A stretch of 64,000 bases of DNA from Octopus sinensis. Its lineage: Eukaryota. Under the pieces are notes generated by a model. The model did no database searches. It saw only the letters and a list, made by a program, of their open reading frames with translations, and was not told the origin of the DNA. The DNA is taken from assembly GCF_006345805.1 (NCBI RefSeq), contig NC_043003.1, positions 92,752,001 to 92,816,000 on the forward strand, written 5' to 3'. Shown here piece after piece: positions 3,517 through 61,626 of the stretch (the first letter of the stretch is position 1; the number at the start of each line of letters is the position of its first letter). The translations under genes were made by a program, and so were the position numbers.

Positions 3517-3729
3517 TCTTTACTCTTTTGTTTCAGTCATTTGACTGCGGCCATGCTGGAGCACTGCCTTTAAGTCGAGCAAATCGACCCCAGCACTTAT
3601 TCTTTGTAAGCCTAGTACTTATTCAATCAAGCTCTTTTGCCGAACCGCTAAGTTACGGGGACCTAAACACACCAGCATCGGTTGTTAAGCGATGTTGGGA
3701 GGACAAACCCAGACACACAAACATACATG

Positions 3730-3794
<65 letters not shown>

Positions 3795-3966
3795 ACACAT
3801 ATATACAACGGGCTTCTTTCAGTTTCCGTCTACCAAATCCATTCACAAGGCTTTGGTCGGCCTGAGGCTATAGTAGAAGACACTTGCCCAAGGTGCCATG
3901 CAGTGGGACTGAACCCGGAACCATGTGGTTGGTAAGCAAGCTACTTACCACACAGCCACTCCTGTG
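3517..3966 (-). mobile_element. tRNA-derived SINE family S1: head, CORE-like body, (CA/TA) microsatellite, tail A (copies at about 12591-12987, 46787-47173, 58912-59363, 59586-60010 and 41100-41420, all -; 28975-29270 +)
   Basis: A box TGGCTGTGTGGTAAG, B box GGTTCAGTCCC, CCTTGGGCAAGT core, shared tail GCTCCAGCATGGCCGCAGTCAAATGACTGAAAC; resembles known octopus tRNA-SINEs, family name not verified. Confidence 0.9.
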
Positions 3967-3983
3967 TCTATAATACATTTTCT

Positions 3984-4080
3984 GGATCTTTTCCTTTGGA
4001 ACGGCATATGTCAACACAATTTCTAGTTAACTAAACACTTTTAAACTTCGTATACTGGTAGAATGTGTTTATAAAACATC
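3984..4080. mobile_element. Truncated end fragment of the GG-ended MITE
   Basis: ggatcttttc...aactaaacacttttaaacttcgtatactggtagaatgtgtttataaaacatc matches 10109-10205. Confidence 0.75.
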
Positions 4081-4120
4081 ATTATTGAAAAAAATGATCA
4101 TGAAAAAGCTAATTGTTTAC

Positions 4121-6855: not shown

Positions 6856-7120
6856 AAAAAAATGAAAAGAATTTTGAATTTGTTCTGAAATTAAACCAAG
6901 AAAATTAAAATTTGAATTGATGAAAGATTTCAATATTTCAGAATTTTGATTTCGTTTTCACTCTCAATTTTAAAAGATTTTGTCATTTTACTCCCATCAC
7001 CTTAATTTTCAGTTTACAAAATGAAATCATAGTTTTCATAAACTTGGTGAAGGGAAGAAGGTAAAGCCCTGTTTCCCCAACCTTGAACTCTTTCAAATAA
7101 ATGCAAAACTTTACACTTAC

Positions 7121-7213
7121 CGTAGAACCAGTTTTAGTTTGTCGCTCACTACCAGCTAAGTCGACCAGATTCAGTTTACCAACACGAATATGATTCTCAC
7201 CATCAACACCCAT
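7121..7213 (-). CDS. KIF3B: Kinesin-2 coding exon 9 ([31 protein letters not shown]), switch II
   Basis: DLAGSER switch II; ctctgaag| acceptor and |gtaagt donor; 93 nt. Confidence 0.97.
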
Positions 7214-9002
7214 CTTCAGAGAAAAGAAAACCAAAATAACTATGAAGTGAATCAATAGATGTTTAAGGGAGTTAACAGGGGTCTGTGTCAGCAGGTAGTA
7301 ACACAAAAGAAACTTTACAAAGAGGAATGCATTATTTTTACCAACAGAAAGAATAGTCTAAACATTTCAGAATGATACCAAACAAATTAATAAACAACAT
7401 GTTTCACACATTTATTAGCCACCTCTGATTTAACTCCACCCACAAATAATGGCCCTACAATCACTTGGACCCAATGTAAAGACAACAGGGCTAATAATCC
7501 ATTTCTGGTCATGGAAATTCTAGTAATGGGCTCAAACATTTGAAACCAGACAAATTAAGTAAGAAAGGGAGATAGCAACTAAAGTAATTATAAAGGAAAT
7601 TCAAGCTTAAAGTTAAGTTGCAGCATCATGTTAACTCAGTTAGTATTATATTAAAGCAAAGTGTTAGTATTATAATTTAACAGAATGTTAGTTTTACCAG
7701 CTGTAAAGTTAAAACATTAGATTACTGACTGTAAAGCTTATGTTTTGTAACAAACACAGCATAGTGCCTCTTGCTTTTGGTTTCTATGAAAAACTCATTC
7801 CAATTACTCAAATGCAAATGTTCAAATTTTCAAAACAATCTCACCTCTAATAGGTAATAGAATTAATTACTAAATAGCAATCGTAATATGTTACAAGGTC
7901 CACAGACAAGAGGTGGACCTGTGCAGTTTTCAAGCACTATCCAAGAGATGGGAAGAGATTACTTTGAAGATGTCTGAGATGATGGACAGAAGACATAGTC
8001 ATTAGGGTTCAAATGAGAGAGAACAGCCAATCAAGAGAGGAGAATGGAAGCACATTGCAACCGGCAATATATAAGGGCATCTGACAATCTGGTCAATAAG
8101 AAGACTAAGTATGATGCTCTCAAATTTTGGTACAATGCCAGCAATTTTGGGTGGAGGGGAAAAGTCAATTATATCATGCCCAGTATTCAACTGGTACTTA
8201 TTTTACTGACCATGAAAGGATAAAAGACAAGGTCAACCTCGGCAGAATTTGAACTCAAAACAGAGACAGATGACATGCTGCTAAGCATTTTATCCGACAT
8301 GCTAACAGTTCTGCCAGCTTGCTGCTTTAAGAAGAATCAACATATAACATTGATATTTACTCTGAAATGGTTGTGTGTTTGCTTCTTTCTCTTCTCTTGG
8401 TTGTCTCTTGTGAGATTTTCGTTTTTTATTAACGTGTTATGAGTTAAAATGTATTTCTTTACTGCCCACAAGGGGCTAAACCTAGAGGGGACAAACAAGA
8501 ACAGACAAAGGGATTAAGTCGATTACATCGACCCCAGTGGGAAACTGGTACTTTATTTACCGACCCCGAAAGGATGAAAGGCAAAGTCGACCTTAGCGGA
8601 ATATGAGTTAAAATGGCATAGATTTCACTCATCAGCCGAGTGGATATCATACTAGATGGACAATGAGCTTGTACGCCAAGATCAAATCCACTTCCATGCA
8701 ATCTCAGTCAGCCTGGCTCTTGAGCATGGCAGAAAATAATGAGAATGTCCCCTGTAACAGGTTTACACTTTATTGAAGGAAAAACATTGATTTCTTATCC
8801 TCAATGCTTTAAAATTGCAGCTAAACTCTAGTTTTTATGATTCCCTTGGAGCTTCATGATGCATTCACTTACACATTGTATCAAATGTACATATAGAAAC
8901 GCAACATATATACAAGTAAATATCAAGTGTGTGTGTATGCAAGTGTGCATGTGTGTACATACACATATGAGTGTGTACATGCAGATATTCAAATGTATTT
9001 AC

Positions 9003-9072: not shown

Positions 9073-10108
9073 CTGGATAAATAGATACCAATGGCTAATT
9101 GTTTTTGTAAATTCAGTATTGAAAGTATATTTGCAAAAAATATAATTTAAGCTACATTGCATTCATAAAATTAAAAAAAACCCAAAAAAAAACAAAAACA
9201 AAATAAAAAAATTAAATGACAATTTCATTTAAAAAAATTTATTTATTAAACACTTGTAACTCTGATTTCATTACATTATTCAATTGATTCGAGCTCTGGA
9301 TGCATTAAATTCATGTCAATTTCGTTTTCTAAACTCAAATTATTGAATGAAGAGCTATGGCAGTCTGATGTTCTTTGAACTGGAGAACCTAAGCGCTAAA
9401 TGTAAATAAAGTAAAATTACTGCTACAGCCACCACCACTCATTTGATAATCATAAGAAACATATAATACTTCTTTCTCACATCTAAGCTAACATCTTCAA
9501 CTGACATTTATTTCTATGCCACCATGGTGACCTTAACCAGAAAATGAGCTTTGAAATAACCCTGATAAGTATACAACAATGGAAAGTTATGTGTAACAAA
9601 GAATCTCTTTAGCTTGTTTCTTATTTTTTTAATTTATATCTTCTATGTAGCACATTTGTGTAAACAAGCTTGTGACATTTGGATCAGCTGTCATTAATGA
9701 CAACGTTCTGTTGTCTCACCTCCTGTTTAATATCCAGTGCCCTGGAGGAAGTACCTTCTGCAGGACCAATCAAAATCTTGTAAGTGGTTTTGATGGGCAG
9801 AAACTGATAGAAGACTGTCGTGTACATGTGTATATATTTATGTATGCTTGCGTGTGTGCACACGTATGTGTGTGTTTACATTTGTTCTTGCTTCTACAAA
9901 AGTTGTGACCTATGAGTGGTGATGTTGTCACTTCTGTCATCGAATCATTCATTTGTGGAATAAGAGACCTCTTACTTGGAAAACAGCTAAGTGTTACCAA
10001 CAGAAAGGACATTCAACAATAAAACAATGCCTTAGTAAGATATTCACCTAACCCATGCTAGCATGGAAAATAAACAAAGCTGTTCACATTTGGTTATTTA
10101 CAAGAACC

Positions 10109-10510
10109 GGATCTTTTTGGTTTGACCGGCATTTTAAAAAAATAATTTCCACGTAACTAAACACTTTTAAACTTCGTATACTGGTAGAATGTGTTTATAA
10201 AACATATTTTTCTCTTGGCTTTATTGAGAAAATTCTATGGTTTGTAAGATATTTGTTGTTTCTTTTCTGTAATTTCAACCAATCAATGACGTCTATTGAG
10301 GTGAATACATTCTGTGCCGTATGAATATGTCCCTCGTTTAAGAAACAGATTAGGTTTATTTATATTTCTGAAGAAAAAAAGATACCCTTCCCCTCACCCC
10401 TAACCCTAACACAGATTGAAATGCAATAGATCAATACTAAGGTCATAATTATGGGTGACAATTTCATATGACACCGCTAGAAAAAACTGCCGGTCAAACC
10501 GAAAAGATCC
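10109..10510. mobile_element. GG-ended MITE with 8-bp TSD (Merlin-like; superfamily unverified)
   Basis: About 28-bp TIRs GGATCTTTT.GGTTTGA.CGGCA; perfect TSD CAAGAACC on both sides; internal TTAGGG units. Confidence 0.85.
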
Positions 10511-12283
10511 CAAGAACCTACTCAATCCCAGAGAAATGAAGCCATCAAACACAAGAGACACTATTCCTTGATTGTTTATAAATGAATAGAATGAGGCTAG
10601 ACACTATGTTATGGTGGCTGCTGTAACAACATCTCAAGTTTAAAGAGTTAACAAATGACAATTTTACTCTAAATATGTGAAAGAGTTCAATGGATACTAA
10701 AGCAGAATTTGATAATTTGTAAAGTATGTAACAGAATCTTTTTTTTTGGCTTTGGTCAATAAGTGATATTTCCTATTTACTTCTAACTAGAAATCAAAGG
10801 AAATAACTACTTTTTCCTTGAGTTGCTGAAGTAGAAATATCATTATAGCAAATATTCTGCTCAATACCACATAACTGCTTGTCAGTTGCTCAACCTTAAC
10901 CACTTGGGCATGTCCCTTAGTGGTGGACAATATGTATATCATTAATGATGAGCAGGAGTAGAGGAGTGGGGGCATCAAAACCATGTGTTGAGAGGGAGTC
11001 TTTGGAGTTTGAATAAATGTAACAAAAGCAAAGTTTGAAGCAAATATTTGCCATTTTTCATACTTTTTAGGGGTAAGCAAATAGGAAATAAGTTGTTTCC
11101 CAAGGACCAAAAGTGTTACACAGGGTAATGGGAAGGCTTTCAGACTGATTGCTTGCTACAGTTATTGTTGATGAGTAGCCATGATCATATCTCAAATGAA
11201 CTTATTGAGGTAATCACTGTATAGTCAAAGTTGCTGAAATATAGGGATCACTGCCTAATAAGAAGCAAGAAGTTGGCATTAATTCATGACATATATAAAA
11301 ACAGAAGAAATCATCCAACTTGTTCTTGAATGGAATGAAAAGCAGAAAAGAAAATGGTGTATTGCCAACCAGTTGCTAGGTTAGATAAGAGACAGGTATT
11401 AATTAAACAGGTACAGTACTTGACAGAGTTAGTGCAAAGGGTGAAATGGCAGTGATAAGATATAGGACAGCTAAATCATAGGTCACAAGTGAACATTCCA
11501 CTAGAATCTCTTAGCAAGACATTAAAGTGTGCTTATCCCAGTTTATTTAGTTGGAGAACAGATAGCAGAGTGAGCTAATGACAGCCTCTACACTGATACT
11601 TGACCAGCTAGAAAAAGCAGTCAGATCTCCCTCAAATCACTATCATAAAAATAAAAGGACAGATTCAGTGATGTGGTTGTAGATACTCTGTCTAGAAAAT
11701 AAAAATAAAAATGAGCTGGTCACAGATGGAGTAGATGATGTTTGTAGTTTCCTTGCTTCGGGGGACAACTTGGGCTAAACAATATATTAAATAATTTTCT
11801 GAACAACCACTTGCCTTGTTAGAAATAACATCTAAATGTCTTTCTGATCACACTCTACCTTCTTGAAAAAAAAAGGAAGGAGAAATTGGATAATGGTAAC
11901 TGGGATTCATTATGAATACATAAAGGGCTGGAACATTTTTCATCATAGATCTCTTGGATGATCAGGGCTGAAACCAAGGCAAAATAACAGATACCAGGCT
12001 GTCAAGGAAAAGTCAGTGGCAAAAGGCTAGCATCCAGTGGAGAGATGGATTAGATGTGTTTCTAATATGTTAAGCAATATAGCAAATAAATAGACCCCTG
12101 TGGTTTGTAACTGGATTAACAAGTGACTTTAGCATATATCTAGTATATGTACTGCAAGCTCTCATTACATCTTATTTAAAATATGGGGATAAGCTGTGAG
12201 ATTAATGGCCTAAAGACTAAGTCTTTCCTTCACTATTTTTGTCATTACAATGAATTATTAAAGAAATTTGACAGAGAACATAC

Positions 12284-12363: not shown

Positions 12364-14574
12364 CTGTAATTAAAACCGAAATAAATGAACATATTAATCA
12401 TTTTATTCAATATTTAATATGACAATCGATAAGGACATACTTTCAGCTGTAGTTCTAAAAGTAAGTTACATATTGATAGAAACAAATCATTGTTTATGCT
12501 GTATACATCAAAATCTGAATTTTCATATTTATTAATACATTCGGGCAAATTTGAATGTATTAAGAATAAATACGCAAATCCTCATCTATGTTACTCTTTT
12601 ACTTGTTTCAGTCATTTGACTGCGGCCATGCTGGAGCACCGCCTTTAGTCGAGCAAATCGACCCCGGGACTTATTCTTTGTAAGCCCAGTACTTATTCTA
12701 TCAGTCTCTTTTGCCGAACTGCTAAGTGACGGGGACATAAACACACTAGCATAGGTTGTCAAGCAATGCTAGGGGGACAAACACACACACATATATATAC
12801 ATATATACGACAGGCTTCTTTCAGTTTCCGTCTACCAAATCCACTCACAAGGCATTGGTCGGCCCGGGGCTATAGCAGAAGACACTTGCCCAAGATGCCA
12901 CGCAGTGGGACTGAACCCGGAACCATGTGGTTGGTTAGCAAGCTACTTACCACACAGCCGCCACTCCTTACCACACAGCCACTCCTGTTATGCTTGATCA
13001 AACGTTCTTTAAAAGAAGACAACAATGGTGATAACAGCACCAACACTATTATTCCATCACCACAATAGCAGCTATTTTGCCATATTAGAATGTGGTGTAT
13101 TGCAATATACCACATTCCAAATTGTTTCAGACAGGCATTATCTGAGACCCAATAATGTCATATTTGACCCTACCACTTTTTCCTAAATATGATGTGTGTG
13201 TGTGTGTATGAATGTATGAAAAGAAATAGCTCTCAAGATTCAAGTCATTGTCATCATCATTATTATTTTAATGTCCACATTTCCATGCTCACATGGATCA
13301 GATGGAATTCAATGAGGTGAGGTAGACACACTTCCTCATGCCAACTCTCACGTTTCTAAGCAAGGTAGTATATCTCCATGAACAGACATGTTCTCATGGC
13401 ATATTTGAAATGAATGACACTGCTTGCATAACAGTGACATCATCATCATCATCTTTTAACTTTGTTGCTGTTGTTGTTGATCTGGAAGATAGACAAAAGC
13501 ATTTCAGGTATCAGGGCATGTAATAAGCCTTGAAAAAATTACAAAAATTAATTCCAGGTGAGAATGCAGTCGATAAAGCCGTGAGAACGTGCATTTGTAT
13601 GCGCAAGTACATCAGCTGTTGTGATCGATACTACGTGTACGCGAGAAAAATGCACGTGCACTTTGTACAAAAAAAGCCAGCTGGCTTGAAATAATGCCAC
13701 AAAATGGGACGGTCGGACAGGTTGTTTTGAGAAAATTTGGTTTAAATGTTTGACAACTCAGCACTGTCCATTGGACAAGGGGGGGTGCTCGTAATATATA
13801 TTAGTGACAGAAACTGCATTAATATCAATAAATAATATCTATCCCCACTTAAACGTAGATGTCCTGTTAGAACAAACTATATTGTGGTAGATACCAAACT
13901 TACATATTGGCTTTTGGTGTAAAATGCACTCTTGTTTATATTGATCTCATCAATGATGGACCCTTTACTGCCAGAGATAACAGTGACACATTTCCCGGCC
14001 AGCAATACATACTAGTAAATACTTTTGCTGCCATTTCGACTTTCTATCTCATGGAGATTATAATTCATTTAATGGTGACACATAAAAGCACCAACCGGTC
14101 GTGGCCGTTTGCCAACCTGCTCTAGCCCCTGTGCCGGTAGCACGTAAAAAGCACCCACTACACTCACGGAGTGGTTGGCGTTAGGAAGGGCATCCAGCTG
14201 TAGAAACACTGCCAAATCAGATTGGAGCCTGGTGCAGCCTCCATGGCTTACCAGACCCCGGTCGAACCGTCCAACCCATGCTAGCATGGAAAACGGATGT
14301 CAAATGATGATGATGATAATGACTGCTAATATAATTATATTGCCATTTATATTATATAATTAGTTAAACACTGTAGATATTACAAATAGAAAGAAAAACA
14401 AACAACCCCGAAATTGAATATTACAAGTATTGGGTTGAATTGCACAAAAACATTTTCTTAATTTCACAAATGAAATTATCTCTAAATTTCCTTTTTGTAG
14501 TGGTGGGGATTTTCATATATTCTTTAGATCACTTTCTTTTTATTATGAAATAAAATTTAGTCATGTTATATACC

Positions 14575-24850: not shown

Positions 24851-25889
24851 CCCCCTAAAGCAGTGGTTTTCAACTAGGGTTCCGCCAGCACAGTCTAGGG
24901 GTTCCGCAAGAAGTTACAAAACTGCTAAAATCGACAATAATTTTTAATTCTCCTGTGCAGATATGTGTGCATAAGACTATTAAATTATTGCACAGGGGTT
25001 CCTCGAGCCAGTGGAATGCTTCCTTGGGGTTCCGCTCCAGCAAAAAGTTTGAAAAGCACTGCCTTAAAGGATTATCCCGAGTTTACTCGTGCATCATAAA
25101 TGTATCTTTTTAGAACCAGACAAGTATACTCAGTCAAAATTAACTTTTAATTTTAGCACTCAAACGAGTTTATTTGTTTTGTGTAGTTTCATTTTTGAGC
25201 AATCACGAATTTACTTGTGTTGTTAAAAAAAAAAAGAAGTATTTTTTCATTTGATGGATTTGGCTATCTGGAATGCTTATGTTTTGTATAAAGCATCTTT
25301 GGAAACTTCAGCTTCTGCTATGAAACTGCTGAAATTTAGAATGCAAATAATCACCAAGATTATTGAAAAATATAGGCCCTTATTGCCTCCCATGAAACCA
25401 AGAAGACCATCATCAATCCTACATCCAACAAGATTTGCCCCAGCTGGTCACTTTCCCATGGAAATACCACCAAGTGATAAGAAAAAGACCCATACAAGAC
25501 AGTGTGCAAAATGCGCAGAGAAGAGAGATGCTAAAGGAAAGAAGATTCGAAGAGAATGCAGATACATGTGTGATGTCTGCAAGATAACTTTGCGTGTAAC
25601 TCCTTGCTTTAAAAATGATCATTTTAAATAAACTGTCTATCTAATTTAAAAAAAATTTTCCTTATAAAAAATCAAAGATAAGTTATATGTATTTTTTTTT
25701 CCATGTCCGAGTTAACTCATTTAAATCTAGATGAGTAAAAGTACATTTTAATTTCTATAATAAAAAATAAAGGAAACAAGATAAAAAAAACTTTTTTTGC
25801 AATTAACACAGTGTGTATAATTAAAAAAGGAAAAAAAAAATATGCTCTGAAATAAAAAGCCATATCAAAATAATTGATCCATTAAGGGA
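24851..25889 (+). mobile_element. Internally deleted piggyBac element retaining only the transposase C-terminus (ORF 25251-25631)
   Basis: FFHLMDLAIWNAYVLY plus a Cys-rich domain CAKC...CDVC..LRVTPCF..DH. TTAA at 24847-50 and 25890-93. Ends read CCCCTTAAAGGAT and, reverse-complemented, TCCCTTAATGGAT once the nested MITE is removed. Confidence 0.85.
24861..25061. mobile_element. hAT (Charlie-like) MITE
   Basis: TIRs CAGTGGTTTTCAACT and AGTTTGAAAAGCACTG; 8-bp TSD ccctaaag/ccttaaag. Confidence 0.85.
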
Positions 25890-44319: not shown

Positions 44320-46990
44320 TTAAAGTCGTTATTGATGTCATGATAACCAGCTAAAATGACATCAGTGTATAGTGATTTGCATTTTAGCAATTCAAAGGAA
44401 CGGTAAAACTGATACCAATAAGATCTGATCTCTGCTGTTTCTGGTTTAGGCACAGGGCCAGCAGTTTTTGAGTAGAAGGTGTCAGTTGATAGCACTGCTC
44501 CTAATACTTGATTTGTGCTCAGATCATCAAGTGCTATAATGATCCAGCTACTTTAGCACCCTAATGTTCTAACGATTTTGCCAATTTAGTGTCCTATAAA
44601 CCTGTAATTAATAACAATAATAATTATTTTACTGTGTTTTATTTTAATGCATTTTACATCAGCAAAAACAACACATACTTTTATATTATAATACGTTTTC
44701 TCCTATTTCTAAATTGCAGATGTTTTTGTTATTTTCTCTTTTAGGAAATAATTCAAAAAAGTATATATACTGTTGTGGAGATCAATAAGATAGCTAAAGC
44801 TTATGCTCAAATCAAAAGCTATTGAGAAGGAGTGGCTATCAGATACAATATTTGTAATCATTATGTAATGGTTTTAGGCTTGAGCTCACAGAGATAACAA
44901 ATGCTTTTTTTTTTATTGGTTTTGTGCGGAAGAATGGGTTGTTCATTGGCTTTGCCGCCCTACCTCCTCCTCCTGTAACATATGCTTTCCATGCTGGCAA
45001 GCAGGAGAGCAGGTAGGTGGGCATATATATATATATATCTATATCATTATGTAAAATTATGGTACTTTTTAAAGATTTAATTGCAAACATCTTTAAGTTC
45101 TAGGTAAATTTTATCATGAGCTTCTTTCAGTTTTCATCTACCAAATCCACTTACAAGGCTTAGGTTGGCCCAAGGTTATAGTAGAAGACACTTATATAAA
45201 GTGCTGTGCAACGGAACTGAACCTAAGGCCATATTGTTGGGTTTTTACAGCTGGATGCCCTTCCTAACACAAACCACTCTGAGTGGACTCAGTGCTTTTT
45301 ACATGGCACTAGCAGAGGCGATGTTAGTTTTGGCATCATTTTTATAGTTGGATGCCCTTCCAAATGCCAACCACTTTGAGTGTGAATTTGTTCAATTTCT
45401 GGATGAACTTATGGCTAAATTGTTTCAAATTTTGGCACAAAGCCAGCAATTTTAGCAGGAGGTGGGGCAAGTCAATTACATAATTCCCAGTACTTGACTG
45501 GTACTTTATTTCATCAATCAGGAGAAAACGGAAAGCAAAGTTAACTATAGCAGTGTTTGAACTCAGAATGCAAAGAGCCACTGATTCTGCCAGCTCACTG
45601 CCTTCTATTACAGTTACATAATAAGTTTTAGCTCATCATAGATTTTTATTAAAAACACTATTGGCACTGAAAATATCACTGCCACCAATTAGTTCTGTAG
45701 TTGGCAGCATAAAAGATCTTTAAAATGCTATAATTTGACATACTTTTCCCAGTTAGGTCTCTGAACCACAGTTAGTATTTACATCAGAAATGTGATATAT
45801 TTTAGGTCAGTAGTTTCAAAGTAACGAAGTCATTAAGTGCAGTACATTGCATCTGTCCATCTTATTGAAAAGACTCACAGAAATAGTGAATCATCTTCCT
45901 CATCAACACTAAACACCATCGCTGAATGTTCTGGAGAAGTGATATCATCACCATCATTTAACGTCCGCTTTCCATGCTAGCATGGGTTGGACGATTTGAC
46001 TGAGGTCTGACGAACCAGACTCCAATCTGATCTGGCAGAGTTTCTACAATTGGATGTACTTCCTAACGCCAACCACTCTGAGAGTGTAGTGGGTGCTTTT
46101 ACGTGCCACCAGCACGAGGGCAAGTTTGGTGGTGCTGGAAACAGCCACGCCCATATGGTGCTTTTTACGTGCCACCTGCACAGGAGCCAGTCCAGTGGCA
46201 CTGGCAACGACCTCGCTCGAATGTTTCACATGCTACCAGGACAAGTGCTAGTAAGGGGACGCGGTAATGATCACGATCGAATGGTGTGCTTAACGCGCCA
46301 TCGGCATGAAGGCCAGCTTGTTATTTTGCTAAATTAATTAAAATAAACAGTCTAATAAACCCTTTTGATACCAACCCACTTGAGACTAACCCTAGTTCTA
46401 CGATACAAACTTCCTGTTTTAAAGTGATCTAAATTAGAACCTCCAATCAAAATTTCATGATAACTTATGTTACAAACACCAACTTAAAGACAAAGTTATC
46501 CTACTAAATTCTTCATTATTTTCAAAATTAACTGAAACAAAAGCAAGATATTTTAACAGAAATATGGTAACTAAAAGGTTAGATATAATAGCTTAATTTT
46601 AATTAGTGTAACAAAATTAAAAACATTTTTGATAAATTAATGATGAAATTAATGTTAGCATTTTGAATTTAAATTGTGTTGTTATTTTCACAGAGATCTG
46701 TAATCCATTAATGTGAATAACATTTCCAAAATATCACTGGGGATGAATCTATGGAGCTATGGTGGACAATAATAGTCTTTTTTTTGCCTTTTCTTTTACA
46801 AGTTTCAGTCATTTGACTGTGGCCATGCTGGAGCACCATCTTTAGTCGAGCAAGTCGACCCCAGGACTTATTCTTTGTAAGCCTAGTACTTATTCTATTG
46901 GTTTCTTTAGCCAAACTGCTAACTTACGGGGATGCAAACACACCAGCATCGGTTGTCAAGCGATGTTGGGGGGACAAACACAGACACACA

Positions 46991-47036
<46 letters not shown>

Positions 47037-48126
47037 TACGATGGGCTTCTTTCAGTTTCTGGTCGGCCCGAGGCTATAGTAGAAGACACTTGCCCAAGGT
47101 GCCATGCAGTGGGACTGAATCCAGAACCATGTGGTTAGTAAGCAAGCTACTTACCACACAGCCACTCCTACGCATCAAGTTTCTGCATTTAGATACTCTC
47201 AGACACGGCTATTCAAATTCTATTACAAGGTTATTATCCTTTCTAATACTCTACTAGTTTGTCATACATGTTCCATTTCCTATTCTTACTCTTCTTCTGT
47301 TCATGACTGCCTGATTTGCTGTTTGGCCTTACCAAGTTAAACAAATCTTTCACAGGGTAACAAGTCTTTGGATTGCAAGGTCTATTCTTGATAAAGTTTG
47401 CTGTAATGATCTGCTAGGAAAATCATCATAGTAGGTAAGAATTATAATTGTTTTATGCAAAGTATTCAATAAAACAGATATGGCTTAGCTGATTATCAAT
47501 AGTTCAATTAATAATTTTTCCTAACACATCTGGTTTTTAGTCACGGCATTACTATTATTTTATCTTTTTCCAACTCCACCCAATCACTCTCACCCTTTCT
47601 TCTTAATGTGAGAAGTCAAGTGGCTCCTCTATAGCAAGAAACCTGCTCTGTGCCCTTACACCATACTTTAGTCCCACTTCAGTTGGGGTTCATAGCTCCT
47701 TGGCAATCTCACTAGTGTTGGTGGCACAAAAATGCATCCAGGACATGCTGTAAAGTGGACAGTGTAAGGAAGAGCATCACGTTGTAGAGGTCATGCCAAA
47801 GCAGACACTGGAGTACAATGCAGTCCACTGACCCACCGGATCCTGTCAAACTGTCCAACCCATACTACCATGGGATGTGGATGTTAAATGATGATGATGA
47901 AAAGTGGACATCAGAACAATTTTAAACTCTAATGTGGAGCCATCAAGTACTCCTTAATTATTCTGCTAAATCTAGCATGCAAGGAACTACTAAATGCTCC
48001 TTAATTATTCTACTAAATTTATCATGTATCACCAAACCCCAATCTTCTTTATGAAGATGGCTGTATCTACCTTTTCCAAAACAATTGTAAAAGATGGATA
48101 ACTGAAAATGAAGAATAAATATTCAC

Positions 48127-55699: not shown

Positions 55700-57650
55700 T
55701 TAATAACAAATTTAGTGAGCTAATCGCGTTACAAGTTTCGATTTTCAGTAATTCCTTATATCTCGCAGAACACACAAACAATTTTTATTTTTAGATGAAA
55801 AAGTGGCACAAATCTTTTAACCTGAATTTTAAAAAATATCCATTCAAAATGAATTATTTTGCCTTAATAAAAATGCAAAAACCTTCCAAAATAACAAACA
55901 AAACGTTTAGTAAAAATGAAAAGAAATATTGAAGAATATTCTCGTACATTTAAAAATCTATATACAAAAAATACATCGCGAAATATTGTTTTTCTTTACT
56001 AATAAGATATTATTATCAGAATAATTTTCAAGTAAGCAATAAATGTTATACATTTGAAGACAGCTAAAACATAAATATTAATTACCGTCCGTTATTAATA
56101 AGCTTATCTCCTAGAATGATTAAATACATCATCTGAATCAAAACAGTTGGGTCAGAAATATTATCAGAGATTATCAACACCCATGTAAACTTCGACGTTC
56201 TCGTTTGACGATGATCTTTCAAATGAATTTTAAGCTGGATTACAAATTCCTGAAGTCGAATAAACGATAGACTCCCGATAAACAGTTCGAATCTCATTTT
56301 CAATTCTCATTTTACTTGAAATACATCAGAAATATTCCTAAAAGGGAACGAACATCAAAACATTGCAATTTATATTCTCCTTCTATAAAGGCGAGGCCTT
56401 GTGCCTTTGCAAGAAATCAATATTCTGACCCAACAGGTCATCTTACCTTTACATCGACGAGAGAATCGGGAGTGTCATTTTTTTTTATTGCAATTCAACA
56501 AATATCTTGCCGTTTTCAAAAACAATTAAAAAAATTATATATCAAATATAATGTACAGAAGATGGTCAGATATAATTGGCTATTTTAATATCCATGATAA
56601 AATGGTAAGACATCGGAACGACACTAAATTGATGCATTCGTAAGTAGTGTTTTAATGAGCTAAGCATGAGTAAGCATTACAACTGAGCTTAATAACAGTT
56701 ATCTACATGATTAATCATCGAAAGTATAGCGAGAAATGTTAGCTTTAATAACAAATAGATGAAATTTGGCCGATCAGAAAATATATACCTCTATATTTTC
56801 ATAACATCATAATCATATGCTTAAAACAGAATACGAACATAGAAAAAAAAAAGAGTGCGAACTTTTTTTCCCCTTATTTCGCTGTATCTTATTTCTCGAA
56901 GTCTATACTTAGTTTAAATATACATATATAATTTTTTTAACAGTTCTGAATTAATCATTAATCAATAAATTATTCAACTATATAAATTACATCAAGAAAA
57001 GGAAAGATACGTTGTGAATTCTATAATTTTAACCAAGAAATTAAACAGGCTAGATCTTTCTCGTTTAGATTGTTCACTGATATCTTTGTTAATCAACAAT
57101 ATTTCTTCCCCCACTTCTGTTATGAATATAATGTAGCTATAATGTAATGGACATTTGAAAAATAGAAGTTAAAAGGAAGACGAATTAGTAAGCCATTATG
57201 ATGTTTGTGTATGTAGCTGAATGCGGTCACCATGCCAATAGCTGGTGGACACCTCTGTAATACTGAGGCAGCAAGAAATGTAAGACAATATTAACCAGCT
57301 TCAAGCAGCGTTATTTTAAGAGTAAAAAAAGGCTATAGCAAGGCAAAATAGTTATCTTACCTAGGATGAAAATATTAAAGGCTTGGAAAATAAAGAAGTC
57401 GGTCCTGGTCAAAATAATATTCGACCGACTTTTCGATCTTTATAGACAGAAATACCAGTGGATCGCCACAACATTAGCTGATAACAGCCACCTAGGTTGT
57501 GTGGAAATAGAGGAAGCATTGAGAGTTAACTCCCTTGCTTAACTGAACTCCCTTCGCTTCTCATCCCACCTCACCCCGCCTTCGCCCTTCTCTCAATAAA
57601 ACTCTCTATTCTTGACAGTTTGTGAGCCAAGTCTTGAGGAAGAAATTTGA
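55700..57650. promoter_or_regulatory. Probable promoter / 5' region of the kinesin gene, possibly bidirectional
   Basis: Unique sequence with visibly more CpG than the introns. Two strong minus-strand donors (AG|GTAAGA), with exon ends at 56447 and 57361. GC box CCCCGCC near 57575. Confidence 0.4.
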
Positions 57651-58281
57651 TACGATATACTTTGAACATCAGTTTTATTATGCTTCTTTTCTTACTTACC
57701 TCATCACTAGCGTTCTATATTTCTTTTATGCAAATTATAAAGTTTAAATCTAATTATATATATATGTATGAAAAAATAACAAAAAGAAAGAAAAATTTAG
57801 ATGCGTCTCTTACTGTTTGTTTCAAAAGTAATTTTTTTTTCTCAAGCACAACATTGATTGGTAAGACGTTCTCTTTGAAATATGATGAGGACGAAACTTT
57901 AACGGTGTGTATTTATTTACTGTTCTATCATGAGTCTGGCAGTAATATCAGAGAATGCAACATAGGAAAAGTAAATTACACACAGACACATAAAGTTAGT
58001 ATTTATCCTCACTGGAACGTGAATGTTCTTGTTAGAACAGACTATACTGTGGTAGATACCATGAGAGAAACTCTATACTGGCTTTTGGTGCTGAATGCAT
58101 TCATATTTATATCGCTAGTGAATAGTGAATTCGAAATTAATGTTCGAATTTCTAAAGAGGAAAGTGTGTCTATGTTCCCTCCACCGCTTTCAATATGCTT
58201 TAAATGAGTTGATAGTAGACGCATTTTATCTCCAGTTAGAAATAAAAGTTTGTGTGAGTAAGTTTGATAGGGGACAATTAA

Positions 58282-58753
58282 GGATCTTTTCGGTTTGAAC
58301 GGCAGTTTTTTCTAGTGGTGTCATATGAAATTGTCACCCATAATTATGACCCTAGTATCGATCTATTGCATTTCAATCTGTTTTAGGATTAGGGTTAGTT
58401 AGGGTTAGGGGTGGGGGGGAAGGGTATATTTTTTTCTTCACAAATGTAAATAAACCCAATTTGTTTCTTAAACGAGGGACAGGATCTTTTCGGTTTGAAC
58501 GGCAGTTTTTAACATAATTTCCAGGTAACTAAAAATTTTAAACTTCGTATACTGATAGAATGTGTTTATAAAACATCTTTTTCTCTTGGCTTTATTGAGA
58601 AAATTCTATAGTTTGTAAGATATTTGTTGTTTTTTTTCTTCAATTTCTGCAATTTCAACCAATCAATGACTTCTATTGAGGTAAAAAAAACATTCTGTGC
58701 CGTATGAGTATGTCCCTCGGGATCTTTTCGGTTTGAACGGCAGTTTTTTCTAG
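58282..58753. mobile_element. Rearranged copy of the GG-ended MITE: left half, inverted right half, then the left end again
   Basis: Three GGATCTTTTCGGTTTGAACGGCAG starts at 58282, 58482 and 58720; see findings. Confidence 0.9.
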
Positions 58754-59150
58754 AGTTTATCTATTAATTATAGTTATAGAATTTGCCACATTAAATATGG
58801 AAGCAGAGGTGAGAGAACGAAATTTTCTTAGAAGGTACAAACCCAGGTTCAAAATTTTTATTAACGAGGCTGATTTTTTTTCTGTCTTAATATCAAAACA
58901 AACACAGGAATCTCTTACTCTTTTACTCTTTTACTTGTTTCAGTCGTTTGACTGCGGCCATGCTGGAGCACCGCCTTTTAATCAAGTAAATCGATCCCAG
59001 GACTTATTCTTTGTAAGCCTAGTACTTATTCTGTCGGTCTCTTTTGCCGAACCGCTAAGTGACGGGGACGTAAACATACCAGCATCGGTTGTCAAGCAAT
59101 GCTAGGGGGACAAACACAGACACATAAACACACACAGACACACAAACACA

Positions 59151-59189
<39 letters not shown>

Positions 59190-59793
59190 TATATATATAC
59201 ATATCTACGACAGGTTTCTTTCAGTTTCCGTCTACCAAATCCACTCACAAAGCATTGGTCGGCCCGGGGCTATAGTAGAAGACACTTGCTGCCCAAGATG
59301 CCACGCAGTGGGACTGAACCCGGAACCATGCGGTTGGTTAGCAAGCTACTTACCACACAGCCATATTTGTACATTAATCAAATCAGATAAATCCAATAAT
59401 GAAAAATTAATGTATCAAATCAATCCAAAAATGTTTATACGCTCGTTCGTTTTTTAGGAGGATGTTCAAAGCGTTTTCATTGCCCCACGGAAATTTTAGT
59501 GGGTGCGCTTGCACCCCACTTTCTGAGCTTATATATGGAAACACTAATTTCAATGACATAATATTTATATACATATACATATATTTTTTTCTTTCTGTTG
59601 TTTCAGTCATTAGACTGCGGCCATGCTGGGGCACCGCCTCGAAGAATTTTAATCAAATAAATCGACCTCAGTACATTTTTTTCTAAAGACTGGCACTTAT
59701 TCTGTCGGATCACTTTTGCCGAACAGCTAGGTTACGGGGATGTAAACATACCAACACTGGTTGTCAAGCGGTGATGGGGGACAAATGACACAT

Positions 59794-59852
<59 letters not shown>

Positions 59853-60072
59853 ACGAGCTTCTTTCAGTTTCCGTCTAACAAATCCGTTTACAAGGCTTTG
59901 GTTGGACTGAGATTATAGTGGAAGGCACTTGTCCCAGGTATCACGTATGGGACTGAACCCGGTACCATGTGGTTGGGAAGAAAACCTTTATACACACCCA
60001 TACCTGCGCTTATAGATGTGTGTATTGCGCGTGCGTGTGTGTATATATATACATATATATATATGTGTATTC

Positions 60073-60516
60073 GGATCTTTTCGGTTTGAACGGCAGTTTT
60101 TTCTAGCGGTGTCATATGAAATTGTCACCCATAATTATGACCCTAGTATCGATCTATTACATTTCAATCTGTTTTAGGGTTAGGGTTAGTTAAGGTTAGT
60201 CAGGGTTAGGGTTAGGTGTGGGGGGAAGGGTATCTTTTTTTTCTTCACAAATGTAAATAAACCCAATCTGTTTCTTAAACGAGGGACATATGCATACGGC
60301 ACATAATGTTTTCACCTCAATAGACGTCATAGATTGGTTGAAATTGCAGAAATTGAAGAAAAATAACAACAAATACCTTACAAACCATAGAGTTTTCTCA
60401 ATAAAGCCAAGACAAAAAGATGTTTTATAAACACATTCTACCAGTATACGAAGTTTAAAAGTGTTTAGTTACGTGGAAATTATTAAAAAAAACTGCCGGT
60501 CAAACCGAAAAGATCC
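60073..60516. mobile_element. Second intact copy of the GG-ended MITE, in opposite orientation
   Basis: Same TIRs and body; TSD gtgtattc/atgtattc; longer TTAGGG-like tract. Confidence 0.85.
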
Positions 60517-60583
60517 ATGTATTCATACTCACATTCATATACGTACATATGTAGATCGTACTTTCGATTCTCGTACGCGGATT

Positions 60584-61100
60584 TTTTCCCACGAGAGTTC
60601 CGGACCCCAGTAACGAACTCATTTGCATACAGCCAATCAGAGCTCACCTTGACCTTGCTGTCAAGCTAACAAACACACTACCAAGTAAACTGAAGACGAA
60701 GAACGGTGTTGTAAATCAACCGATCGTCAGGTTATGCCTGATTTTAGAAGGAGACTAGCAATAAGATAGGTTTGCATCTATGCCTATTATCGGATTTTGT
60801 TAGGGCTTCATATGGTAAAGATGTGGATGGGAAACATGTGGGCAGAGAGTGATGTGCTAGCAACCCTCTCCCCTTACTACTTTACAAAATAAACAACAAC
60901 ACAAATAACTACGCAGGGGCAGCCAAGGTTGAAACAGGAACAAGAACGACAAGCATTCTTAAAAGAGAAAAGAAGCATGGTCATTCCTTATCCAAGTGAC
61001 CTTATCACTTATACGCTCATAAATTAGTTTGGTAGTTGAGCTCTGATTGGTTATATGCAAATGAATTCATAACTGGGGTCCGGAACTATCGTGGAGAAAA
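60584..61100. mobile_element. MITE-like element with about 63-bp TIRs (unclassified)
   Basis: ttttcccacgagagttccggaccccagtaacgaactcatttgcatacagccaatcagagctca is inverted at 61037-61100. Confidence 0.75.
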
Positions 61101-61155
61101 TATATATATATATATATATCATATAAATGCATGAACATTTAAACACAAAAGAGGT

Positions 61156-61454
61156 ATCCAGAAGGATAGATATATCATTGAGAACAATAGATTTAGTTGG
61201 TGGTCTTCCTATCTTTATTCCAGCTTTTGGTGAAGCAGAAAAGGTTAGAAAGGGTCAAGTGGTGAAAACATTATTTCGGCCTAGCTAAAGGCATCTGGAA
61301 AATGTAAAACTGCTGTCAGAGGAAAACCATTGTTCCACCATGGGAACAGTTCTGCTAGTTTAAATTTGGCCATGGTGGATCGAATCCACTTCATGCATGC
61401 AAGATTCACTACATATATATATATATATTATATATATATATATATAATATATAT

Positions 61455-61497
<43 letters not shown>

Positions 61498-61626
61498 CTA
61501 GGCCGAAATAATACTTTCACTTCTTGACCCTTTCTAACCTCTTCTACTTCACCAAAAGCTAGAATAAAGATAAGAAGACCACCAACTAAATCTATTGTTC
61601 TCAATGATATATCTATCCTTCTGGAT
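61156..61626. repeat. Fold-back element with 131-bp inverted arms and an AT-microsatellite spacer
   Basis: 61156-61286 is the reverse complement of 61496-61626 with few mismatches; flanked by ggt/ggt. Confidence 0.85.

What the first reader, a model, noticed from the sequence alone, without database searches (positions are those of the whole stretch)
58282..58753. Genomic fossil of a transposon self-integration (inversion) circle
Compared with the intact copies (10109-10510, 60073-60516), this locus has three parts. First is the left half, from end A to ...AAACGAGGGACA (58282-58481). It is joined precisely to terminus B and the inverted right half, ending ...TATGTCCCTCG (58482-58719). That is joined precisely to terminus A again for 34 bp (58720-58753). 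Both junctions use the exact first base of a TIR, and the 9-mer CGAGGGACA is duplicated in inverted form at the two breakpoints, like a TSD. This is the product expected when an excised cut-and-paste transposon inserts both ends into its own middle on opposite strands: one circle with an inverted half. Such autointegration is established in vitro for Tn10, mariner and Sleeping Beauty. Inference: that normally dead-end circle was re-captured into the chromosome as slightly more than one unit, with no outer TSD. This would imply a route by which suicide circles re-enter the genome and create new MITE architectures with directly oriented ends.
Basis: partly seen in the sequence, partly recalled or inferred. 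Interest (0 to 1): 0.8.

Follow-up and report, generated by a model that had tools for sequence, protein, structure and literature searches.

The report
Self-inserted, half-inverted MITE copy
One copy of a small non-coding transposon in this animal-like genome has had its own ends pasted into its own middle, flipping half of it; this is a tidy natural relic of a known transposase side-reaction, and nothing shows that a free "suicide circle" re-entered the chromosome.

Summary
58282-58481 is the left half of a ~430-bp MITE. 58482-58719 is its right half inverted, starting at base 1 of the B terminus. 58720-58753 is a third terminus (A type, 34 bp). Flipping the right half back gives a full-length alignment to the intact copies with no base lost and the 9-mer CGAGGGACA duplicated in inverted form. 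Under random breakage this geometry has P ~2.5e-8.

A new result is that the internal target was not random. TACTCA abuts the duplicated target here and at both intact insertions (P ~1.7e-5), and the parent element carries that motif only once, at the breakpoint. The junctions are therefore transposase-made.

It does not explain why the outer left boundary is exactly base 1 of terminus A, nor the 34-bp redundancy. In-situ alternative transposition (sister-chromatid, hybrid-element or reversed-ends type) into the element's own target, followed by truncation of the distal copy, gives the same structure without any capture step. Independent nested insertions into the hotspot remain a live rival.

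The family is in none of the reachable collections, so copy number, empty site and assembly correctness are untested. The family looks Merlin-like (GG termini, 8-9-bp TSD).

The parts
58282..58481 (+). Left half of the MITE: terminus A (TIR ~29-30 bp) through the internal TTAGGG-like tract to ...AAACGAGGGACA
   Evidence: 90.3% to c2 positions 1-216, E 4e-81; colinear alignment
58473..58481 (+). Target 9-mer CGAGGGACA, copy 1, abutting base 1 of terminus B (junction 1)
   Evidence: the motif-proximal cut lies 0 nt from TACTCA in the parent element
58482..58719 (-). Right half of the same element, inverted: starts at base 1 of terminus B and ends ...TATGTCCCTCG
   Evidence: 90.4% to c2 positions 208-444 in reverse orientation, E 9e-90
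58705..58710 (-). TACTCA target-flanking motif (read as TGAGTA on the + strand), the only copy in the parent element
58711..58719 (-). Target 9-mer, copy 2, inverted (TGTCCCTCG), abutting base 1 of the third terminus (junction 2)
58720..58753 (+). Third terminus, A type, 34 bp, identical to 58282-58315 and 60073-60106; followed by unique DNA
   Evidence: 58754-58921 has no other copy in the window
10109..10510 (-). Intact copy c1 (402 bp), 8-bp TSD CAAGAACC (10101-10108 and 10511-10518), TACTCA at 10519-10524
60073..60516 (+). Intact copy c2 (444 bp), 8-bp TSD GTGTATTC/ATGTATTC (60065-60072 and 60517-60524), TACTCA at 60526-60531
3984..4083 (+). Truncated fourth copy: B end, about 100 bp

Best explanation
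The locus is one copy of a ~430-bp non-autonomous cut-and-paste element (Merlin-like: GG termini, 8-9-bp TSD) that its own transposase rearranged while it sat in the chromosome. Proposed sequence of events:
1. Point mutation gave this copy an internal sequence matching the family's preferred target (CGAGGGACA followed by TACTCA).
2. A B end and an A end that did not belong to one excised element were paired. Most simply these were the B end of the copy on one sister chromatid and the A end of the copy on the other (sister-chromatid or hybrid-element transposition). Alternatively they were the B end and the A end of an adjacent partial copy (reversed-ends transposition).
3. The pair was cut out and inserted into that internal target with a 9-bp stagger, in the inverting sense. 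This yields flank-A-L-t-B'-R'-t'-A..., an intact linear chromatid with the right half flipped and the target duplicated in inverted form.
4. The distal copy beginning at the third terminus was then cut down to 34 bp, by a later deletion or by aborted re-replication and end joining in the same event. That also removed the right-hand TSD.

Shown here: the anatomy, the exact junctions, the lack of sequence loss and the target motif. Inferred: which two ends were used, the timing, and the truncation. The product has three termini in direct orientation, so it is a dead copy.
For: - Exact termini at both novel junctions, an inverted 9-bp overlap and no loss of element sequence; P ~2.5e-8 under random breakage.
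- The breakpoint coincides with the only TACTCA in the parent element. The same hexamer abuts the TSD of both ordinary insertions (P ~1.7e-5 for any shared 6-mer among three random sites), and the intact copies lack it internally.
- The outer left boundary is exactly base 1 of terminus A with ordinary flanking DNA. An in-situ model predicts this.
- A third terminus of the correct type (A) and orientation follows t'. This is the hallmark of two-copy (alternative) transposition.
- The literature documents SCT, HEI and RET, and composite insertions bordered by partial or full transposon copies made by aborted re-replication and NHEJ (PMC3744419; PMC4270019; bioRxiv 10.1101/2020.01.07.897926; PMC2775673).
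- A 9-bp stagger is within the 8-9-bp range of Merlin elements, which also have 5'-GG termini (PMC8101967).
Against: - There is no independent data. The family is absent from all reachable collections and the flanking ORFs gave no handle, so no empty site, intermediate allele or read support could be examined.
- The model needs an extra truncation event.
- Both ordinary TSDs in the window are 8 bp, not 9, and the Merlin assignment rests on termini and TSD only.
- To my knowledge alternative transposition has been shown for hAT and P elements, not for Merlin.
- The 9-bp overlap is equally well produced by two independent 8-bp insertions in the two registers seen at c1 and c2.
Confidence: 0.5

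Rival explanations
1. Independent nested insertions into an internal hotspot. A second copy inserted in inverted orientation at the CGAGGGACA/TACTCA site of a resident copy. A third copy then inserted at the same site of the second. A deletion of at least ~840 bp then removed everything from base 35 of the third copy to beyond the resident copy's B end.
For: - The internal site carries the family's target motif, so repeated hits at the same place are plausible.
- Junction 1 fits an 8-bp insertion in the c1 register (TSD abuts TACTCA). Junction 2 fits an 8-bp insertion in the c2 register (1-nt spacer). Two canonical 8-bp events would therefore explain the odd 9-bp overlap.
- MITE multimers and self-insertions that arose from independent insertion events are documented in rice and maize (PMC5172404, citing Jiang & Wessler 2001).
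Against: - It needs four events (three insertions and one large deletion) against three.
- It needs two different copies that both carry the TACTCA variant, which 0 of 2 intact copies here have.
- It needs the right orientation twice.
- No complete inserted copy and no direct TSD pair survives to support it.
- What remains is exactly one element's worth of sequence plus a stub. The single-event model predicts this; the nested model merely permits it.
Confidence: 0.2
2. An excised element autointegrated into a free inversion circle. The circle, or a rolling-circle product of it, was then captured into a chromosomal break as one unit plus 34 bp.
For: The sequence is an exact circular permutation of the predicted inversion circle (A-L-t-B'-R'-t') plus 34 bp. 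Autointegration into inversion products carrying both ends and the TSD is established for Sleeping Beauty and piggyBac in cells (PMC3952818). There is no outer TSD.
Against: - The outer left boundary is exactly base 1 of terminus A. Random opening of a 429-bp circle gives that with P ~0.002.
- Transposase cleavage at that terminus would give exactly one unit and no 34-bp redundancy.
- More than one unit requires an additional replication step.
- No capture mechanism or precedent was found in the papers read (describes the process as suicidal).
- The in-situ route gives the same structure with fewer assumptions.
Confidence: 0.08
3. Assembly artefact. The three identical 29-bp termini let an assembler mis-order or mis-join segments of one or more ordinary copies.
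For: Three exact repeats of 29-34 bp lie within 470 bp, and the segment order between them cannot be verified without reads. No read data are available here.
Against: A mis-join inside a shared repeat cannot create the two novel junctions. They lie outside the repeat, between internal element sequence and base 1 of a terminus, and they show a TSD-like inverted overlap next to the family's target motif. Both junctions must exist in real molecules; only the order of the segments could be wrong.
Confidence: 0.07

Closest known systems
Inversion-type autointegration (intramolecular transposition) products of cut-and-paste transposons: Tn10, and Sleeping Beauty, piggyBac and Hsmar1 in vitro or in cells (PMC3952818; PMC3544897)
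   Same: Both transposon ends are joined to one staggered internal target, one segment is inverted, the ends change relative orientation, the target is duplicated in inverted form, and no sequence is lost.
   Different: Those products are free circles recovered from assays and are dead ends. This one is linear and chromosomal, keeps an ordinary outer flank at terminus A, and carries a third terminus.
Alternative transposition: sister-chromatid and reversed-ends transposition of maize Ac/Ds with composite insertions, and hybrid element insertion of Drosophila P elements (PMC3744419, PMC4270019, bioRxiv 10.1101/2020.01.07.897926, PMC2775673)
   Same: It uses ends of two different copies, produces chromosomal inversions and duplications bounded by exact termini with TSDs, and leaves partial (fractured) copies joined to unrelated DNA.
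   Different: The published cases insert kilobases to megabases away and rearrange host DNA. Here the target would be inside the element itself, so only the element is rearranged. The family here is probably not hAT or P.
Nested MITE multimers and self-insertions (rice and maize Tourist, Castaway, Gaijin; reviewed in PMC5172404) and the chromosome-breaking double Ds (mentioned in PMC3260210)
   Same: A copy of a family lies inside another copy of the same family, driven by target preference, and multiple ends lie close together.
   Different: Those contain complete inserted copies, each flanked by a direct TSD. Here no inserted copy is complete, the halves are complementary, and the duplication is inverted.
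Merlin superfamily MITEs (Feschotte 2004, as summarised in PMC8101967)
   Same: TIR of 24 bp or more with a terminal 5'-GG, and 8- or 9-bp TSDs.
   Different: No IS1595-type DDE transposase partner was found. The assignment rests on termini and TSD length only. A one-sided TACTCA target motif is not a described Merlin feature as far as I know.

Membership tests
Inversion-type autointegration product | Both novel junctions start at the exact terminal base of a transposon end and join it to internal sequence of the same element | tested here: met
Inversion-type autointegration product | One segment is inverted, with no net loss of element sequence | tested here: met
   The un-inverted locus is colinear with c1 and c2 over its full length
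Inversion-type autointegration product | Target duplication in inverted orientation, of the family's TSD length | tested here: inconclusive
   The inverted 9-mer is present, but both ordinary TSDs in the window are 8 bp. 9 bp is within the Merlin range.
Inversion-type autointegration product | Free covalently closed circle containing exactly one unit and two ends | tested here: not met
   The locus is linear in a chromosome, has three termini and 34 bp of redundancy, and has an ordinary flank at base 1 of terminus A
Alternative transposition product (SCT / HEI / RET) | Involves a terminus from a second copy, so an extra terminus of the complementary type sits at the insertion junction | tested here: met
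   A third terminus, A type and in direct orientation, lies immediately after t'
Alternative transposition product (SCT / HEI / RET) | The donor-side outer junction of the resident copy is untouched | tested here: met
   58281|58282 is flank|base 1 of A, with no similarity of the flank to element sequence
Alternative transposition product (SCT / HEI / RET) | A reciprocal product (excision footprint chromatid) or a progenitor allele with a single copy or an adjacent fractured end | not testable with these tools
   The family and locus are absent from all reachable collections
Nested independent insertions | Each inserted copy is complete and flanked by its own direct TSD | tested here: not met
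   No complete inserted copy exists and only one junction per putative insertion survives. A later deletion could have removed them, so the rival is weakened but not excluded.
Merlin superfamily (non-autonomous member) | TIRs of 24 bp or more with a conserved terminal 5'-GG | tested here: met
   GGATC... termini, TIR about 29-30 bp; criterion from PMC8101967
Merlin superfamily (non-autonomous member) | 8- or 9-bp TSD | tested here: met
   8, 8 and 9 bp
Merlin superfamily (non-autonomous member) | Mobilised by a DDE_Tnp_IS1595 transposase encoded by an autonomous partner with the same termini | tested here: inconclusive
   No such domain in the 19 ORFs of 100 aa or more that were scanned. Shorter ORFs and the rest of the genome were not examined.
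hAT superfamily MITE | 8-bp TSD and short TIRs beginning (C/T)A(G/A)NG (criterion from my own knowledge) | tested here: not met
   The termini begin GGATC. The TSD is 8 bp in two cases, but a 9-bp duplication occurs here.

The most novel reading that the evidence does not exclude
The locus really is a re-captured product of extrachromosomal autointegration: an inversion circle, or a rolling-circle copy of it, that re-entered the germline genome. That would show that suicide circles are not always dead ends and can seed copies with directly oriented ends.
Probability: 0.07. Interest if true: 0.75.

Novelty: new member of a known kind. Interest (0 to 1): 0.3.

Why it matters
Self-targeted transposition is well characterised in test tubes and transfected cells, but clean natural relics in genomes are rarely pointed out. 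This locus preserves every diagnostic feature: exact ends, an inverted target duplication and no sequence loss.

It also suggests a cause. A point mutation created the family's target motif inside the element, which would make target preference a liability for the transposon itself.

The locus also marks a place with four same-family termini within 2.3 kb (three direct ones plus the intact copy at 60073-60516). In maize, that kind of configuration drives chromosome breakage and rearrangement.

If a genome-wide census found many such TIR-to-internal junctions, they could serve as a sequence-only read-out of past alternative or auto-transposition rates. As a single unverified locus it is a neat example, not a new principle.

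Tried and rejected
- Both junctions, as one degenerate pattern, in metagenome contigs and genome contigs: 0 hits.
- The plain terminus in metagenome, genome and viral collections: 0 hits. The family is simply not there, so these negatives say nothing about copy number.
- Flanking and MITE-internal mechanical ORFs as handles to other assemblies: none is in the protein collection, and the 186-aa upstream ORF has no homologue.
- Terminus and SINE strings in the paper library: none found.
- Rfam and ARAGORN on the window: nothing.
- Pfam on the ORFs of 100 aa or more: no transposase partner.
- Jiang & Wessler 2001 and Preston et al. 1996 could not be read because they are not held.

Considered and rejected:
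- Template switching or microhomology-mediated repair as the source of the junctions. There is no microhomology at junction 2, and a staggered 9-bp inverted overlap at exact termini is transposase chemistry.
- A P-type excision footprint as the origin of the 34-bp stub. Its second half is not the opposite terminus.
- The third terminus belonging to a different element that shares the TIR. There is no partner terminus within 57000-61500, even with 4 mismatches in 16.
- Homology of the c1 and c2 flanks to the element interior as the source of the shared TACTCA. BLAST finds none beyond the motif.

Full report
WHAT IS THERE. The window is AT-rich (36% GC) non-coding eukaryotic-type DNA. It has microsatellites, a ~440-bp interspersed repeat, no long ORFs, no Rfam hit and no tRNA. 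It holds two intact copies of a ~400-440-bp non-coding element with 29-30-bp terminal inverted repeats beginning GGATC:
- c1 at 10109-10510 (minus strand), with a perfect 8-bp TSD, CAAGAACC.
- c2 at 60073-60516 (plus strand), with a 7/8 TSD, GTGTATTC/ATGTATTC.

A truncated B end lies at 3984-4083.

THE LOCUS. At 58282-58753 the terminal 24-mer occurs three times, all on the plus strand and all with 0 mismatches. BLAST and direct reading divide the locus into three parts:
- 58282-58481 is the left half, up to ...AAACGAGGGACA.
- 58482-58719 is the right half in reverse orientation. It begins at base 1 of terminus B and ends ...TATGTCCCTCG.
- 58720-58753 is 34 bp of terminus A, identical to 58282-58315.

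Flipping the right half back gives a 429-bp sequence that aligns end to end with c1 and c2. No element base is missing, and the only extra is a second, inverted copy of CGAGGGACA. Both junction strings are unique in the window. There is no outer TSD, and the DNA after the stub (58754-58921) is single-copy in the window. Under random breakage, two junctions at base 1 of a terminus plus an 8-9-bp overlap would have P ~2.5e-8.

A NEW OBSERVATION: THE BREAKPOINT IS A PREFERRED TARGET.
- Reading outward from the terminus, c1 shows TSD(8)+TACTCA and c2 shows TSD(8)+A+TACTCA.
- The internal junction shows CGAGGGACA+TACTCA.
- A random site of this window has TACTCA at those offsets with P 7.5e-4. Three random sites share any hexamer there with P ~1.7e-5.
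- The parent element of the locus has exactly one TACTCA on either strand, at the breakpoint. c1 and c2 have TATTCA and TATGCA at that place and no TACTCA anywhere.

So the ends went where this family's transposase normally goes, and that site existed in this copy only because of one or two substitutions. This is strong evidence that the junctions are transposase-made. It also means the site is a hotspot, which keeps the nested-insertion rival alive.

MECHANISM. The topology A-L-t-B'-R'-t'-A is what results when a B end and an A end attack the two strands of one staggered target t inside the element in the inverting sense. This is the description of inversion-type autointegration products (PMC3952818). 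The open question is which DNA molecules carried those ends.

That has two difficulties:
- The outer left boundary of the locus is exactly base 1 of terminus A, next to ordinary flank. A randomly opened circle would do that about once in 429.
- A circle cut there by transposase would be exactly one unit long and would leave the 34-bp redundancy unexplained.

The alternative needs no capture. After replication, the B end of the copy on one chromatid and the A end of the copy on the sister are paired, cut and inserted. This is sister-chromatid transposition in Ac/Ds and hybrid element insertion in P elements (PMC3744419; PMC2775673). If the target is t in the first copy, the inverting outcome is flank-A-L-t-B'-R'-t'-A-L-t-R-B-flank, a viable linear chromatid. 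The sister becomes an excision-footprint chromatid. Truncation of the distal copy to 34 bp then gives the observed locus and removes the right TSD. [quoted passage not shown] Reversed-ends transposition between a full copy and a pre-existing adjacent 34-bp A stub gives the same product in one step. I cannot separate these two sub-variants.

THE 8 VERSUS 9 bp ISSUE. Both ordinary TSDs are 8 bp and the overlap here is 9 bp. There are two readings:
- (a) A single event with a 9-bp stagger. The family's termini (5'-GG, TIR of 24 bp or more) and TSD lengths fit the Merlin superfamily, which is defined by 8- or 9-bp TSDs (PMC8101967). That would make 9 bp unremarkable.
- (b) Two independent 8-bp insertions. 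Junction 1 lies in the c1 register (TSD abuts TACTCA) and junction 2 in the c2 register (1-nt spacer). With two registers equally used, two independent events give a 9-bp overlap a quarter of the time.

So this feature does not discriminate strongly.

RIVALS WEIGHED.
- Nested insertion needs three insertions, two of them into the same site of two different copies that both carry the rare internal TACTCA, in the right orientations. It also needs a deletion of at least ~840 bp. Independent nested MITE multimers are documented (PMC5172404), so I give it 0.2.
- Free-circle recapture gets 0.08 for the reasons above.
- Assembly artefact gets 0.07. A mis-join within the shared 29-bp termini could mis-order the segments but could not create the two junctions, which lie outside the repeat and carry transposase signatures.
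- In-situ self-targeted alternative transposition gets 0.5.
- The remainder is unassigned.

WHAT COULD NOT BE DONE. The family is absent from the metagenome, prokaryotic genome and viral collections. Flanking ORFs are not indexed and have no homologues. No paper prints the terminus. Copy number of the composite, the empty site, intermediate alleles, the autonomous partner and read support are therefore all untested. The identity of the organism is not established. The interspersed repeat near 3900 and 59960 reminded me of cephalopod SINEs, but that is a recollection, not a test.

COMPARISON AND NOVELTY. The reaction (intramolecular or alternative transposition) is known. A chromosomal relic of it confined to a single MITE copy, with the cause visible as a target motif created inside the element, is a neat new example, not a new kind of system. 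On its own the locus should be immobile, because all three termini point the same way. It does, however, sit 1.3 kb upstream of an intact copy whose B end is correctly inverted relative to them. [quoted passage not shown]

VERDICT. Interest is 0.3, and the finding is a new member of a known kind.

Noticed in passing
window 10519-10524, 60526-60531, 58705-58710: A one-sided TACTCA motif lies 0-1 nt beyond the TSD at both intact insertions and at the internal breakpoint. This is an apparent target-site preference of the family (P ~1.7e-5 for three random sites sharing any hexamer there). Only three sites are available.
   Followed up: yes
window 58383-58410, 60174-60216 (and the shorter tract in 10109-10510): The MITE carries an internal tract of TTAGGG-like telomere-type repeats whose length differs between copies (a 42-bp gap in c1 and a 16-bp gap in the locus, both relative to c2).
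   Followed up: partly
window 3519-3958, 12591-12959, 46792-47164, 58922-59363, 59584-60014 and weaker copies: A ~440-bp interspersed, SINE-like repeat family with microsatellite tails. The MITE copies at 3984 and 60073 both lie just 3' of such a repeat. ARAGORN does not call it a tRNA and Rfam has no hit. The resemblance to cephalopod SINEs is from memory only.
   Followed up: no
window 58282-60516: Three directly oriented termini (58282, 58482, 58720) lie upstream of intact copy c2, whose B end (60516) is inverted relative to them. Each could pair with it as a 1.8-2.2-kb macrotransposon, or serve as a substrate for further alternative transposition.
   Followed up: no
window 6986-7306 (-): An ORF with a 40-residue match to the kinesin motor domain (Pfam PF00225, E 2.8e-6, 27 bits, just below the gathering score of 29.3). 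It may be an exon of a host kinesin gene, in which case the window is largely intronic.
   Followed up: no
window 25251-25628 (+): A weak match to the piggyBac-type transposase zinc finger (PF13842, E 0.003, below threshold). It may be a decayed piggyBac-like remnant, unrelated to the MITE.
   Followed up: no
window 3984-4083: A truncated copy of the MITE (B end, ~100 bp, more diverged termini) ending abruptly at ...AAAACAT. This is another fractured end of the family within the same 64 kb.
   Followed up: partly
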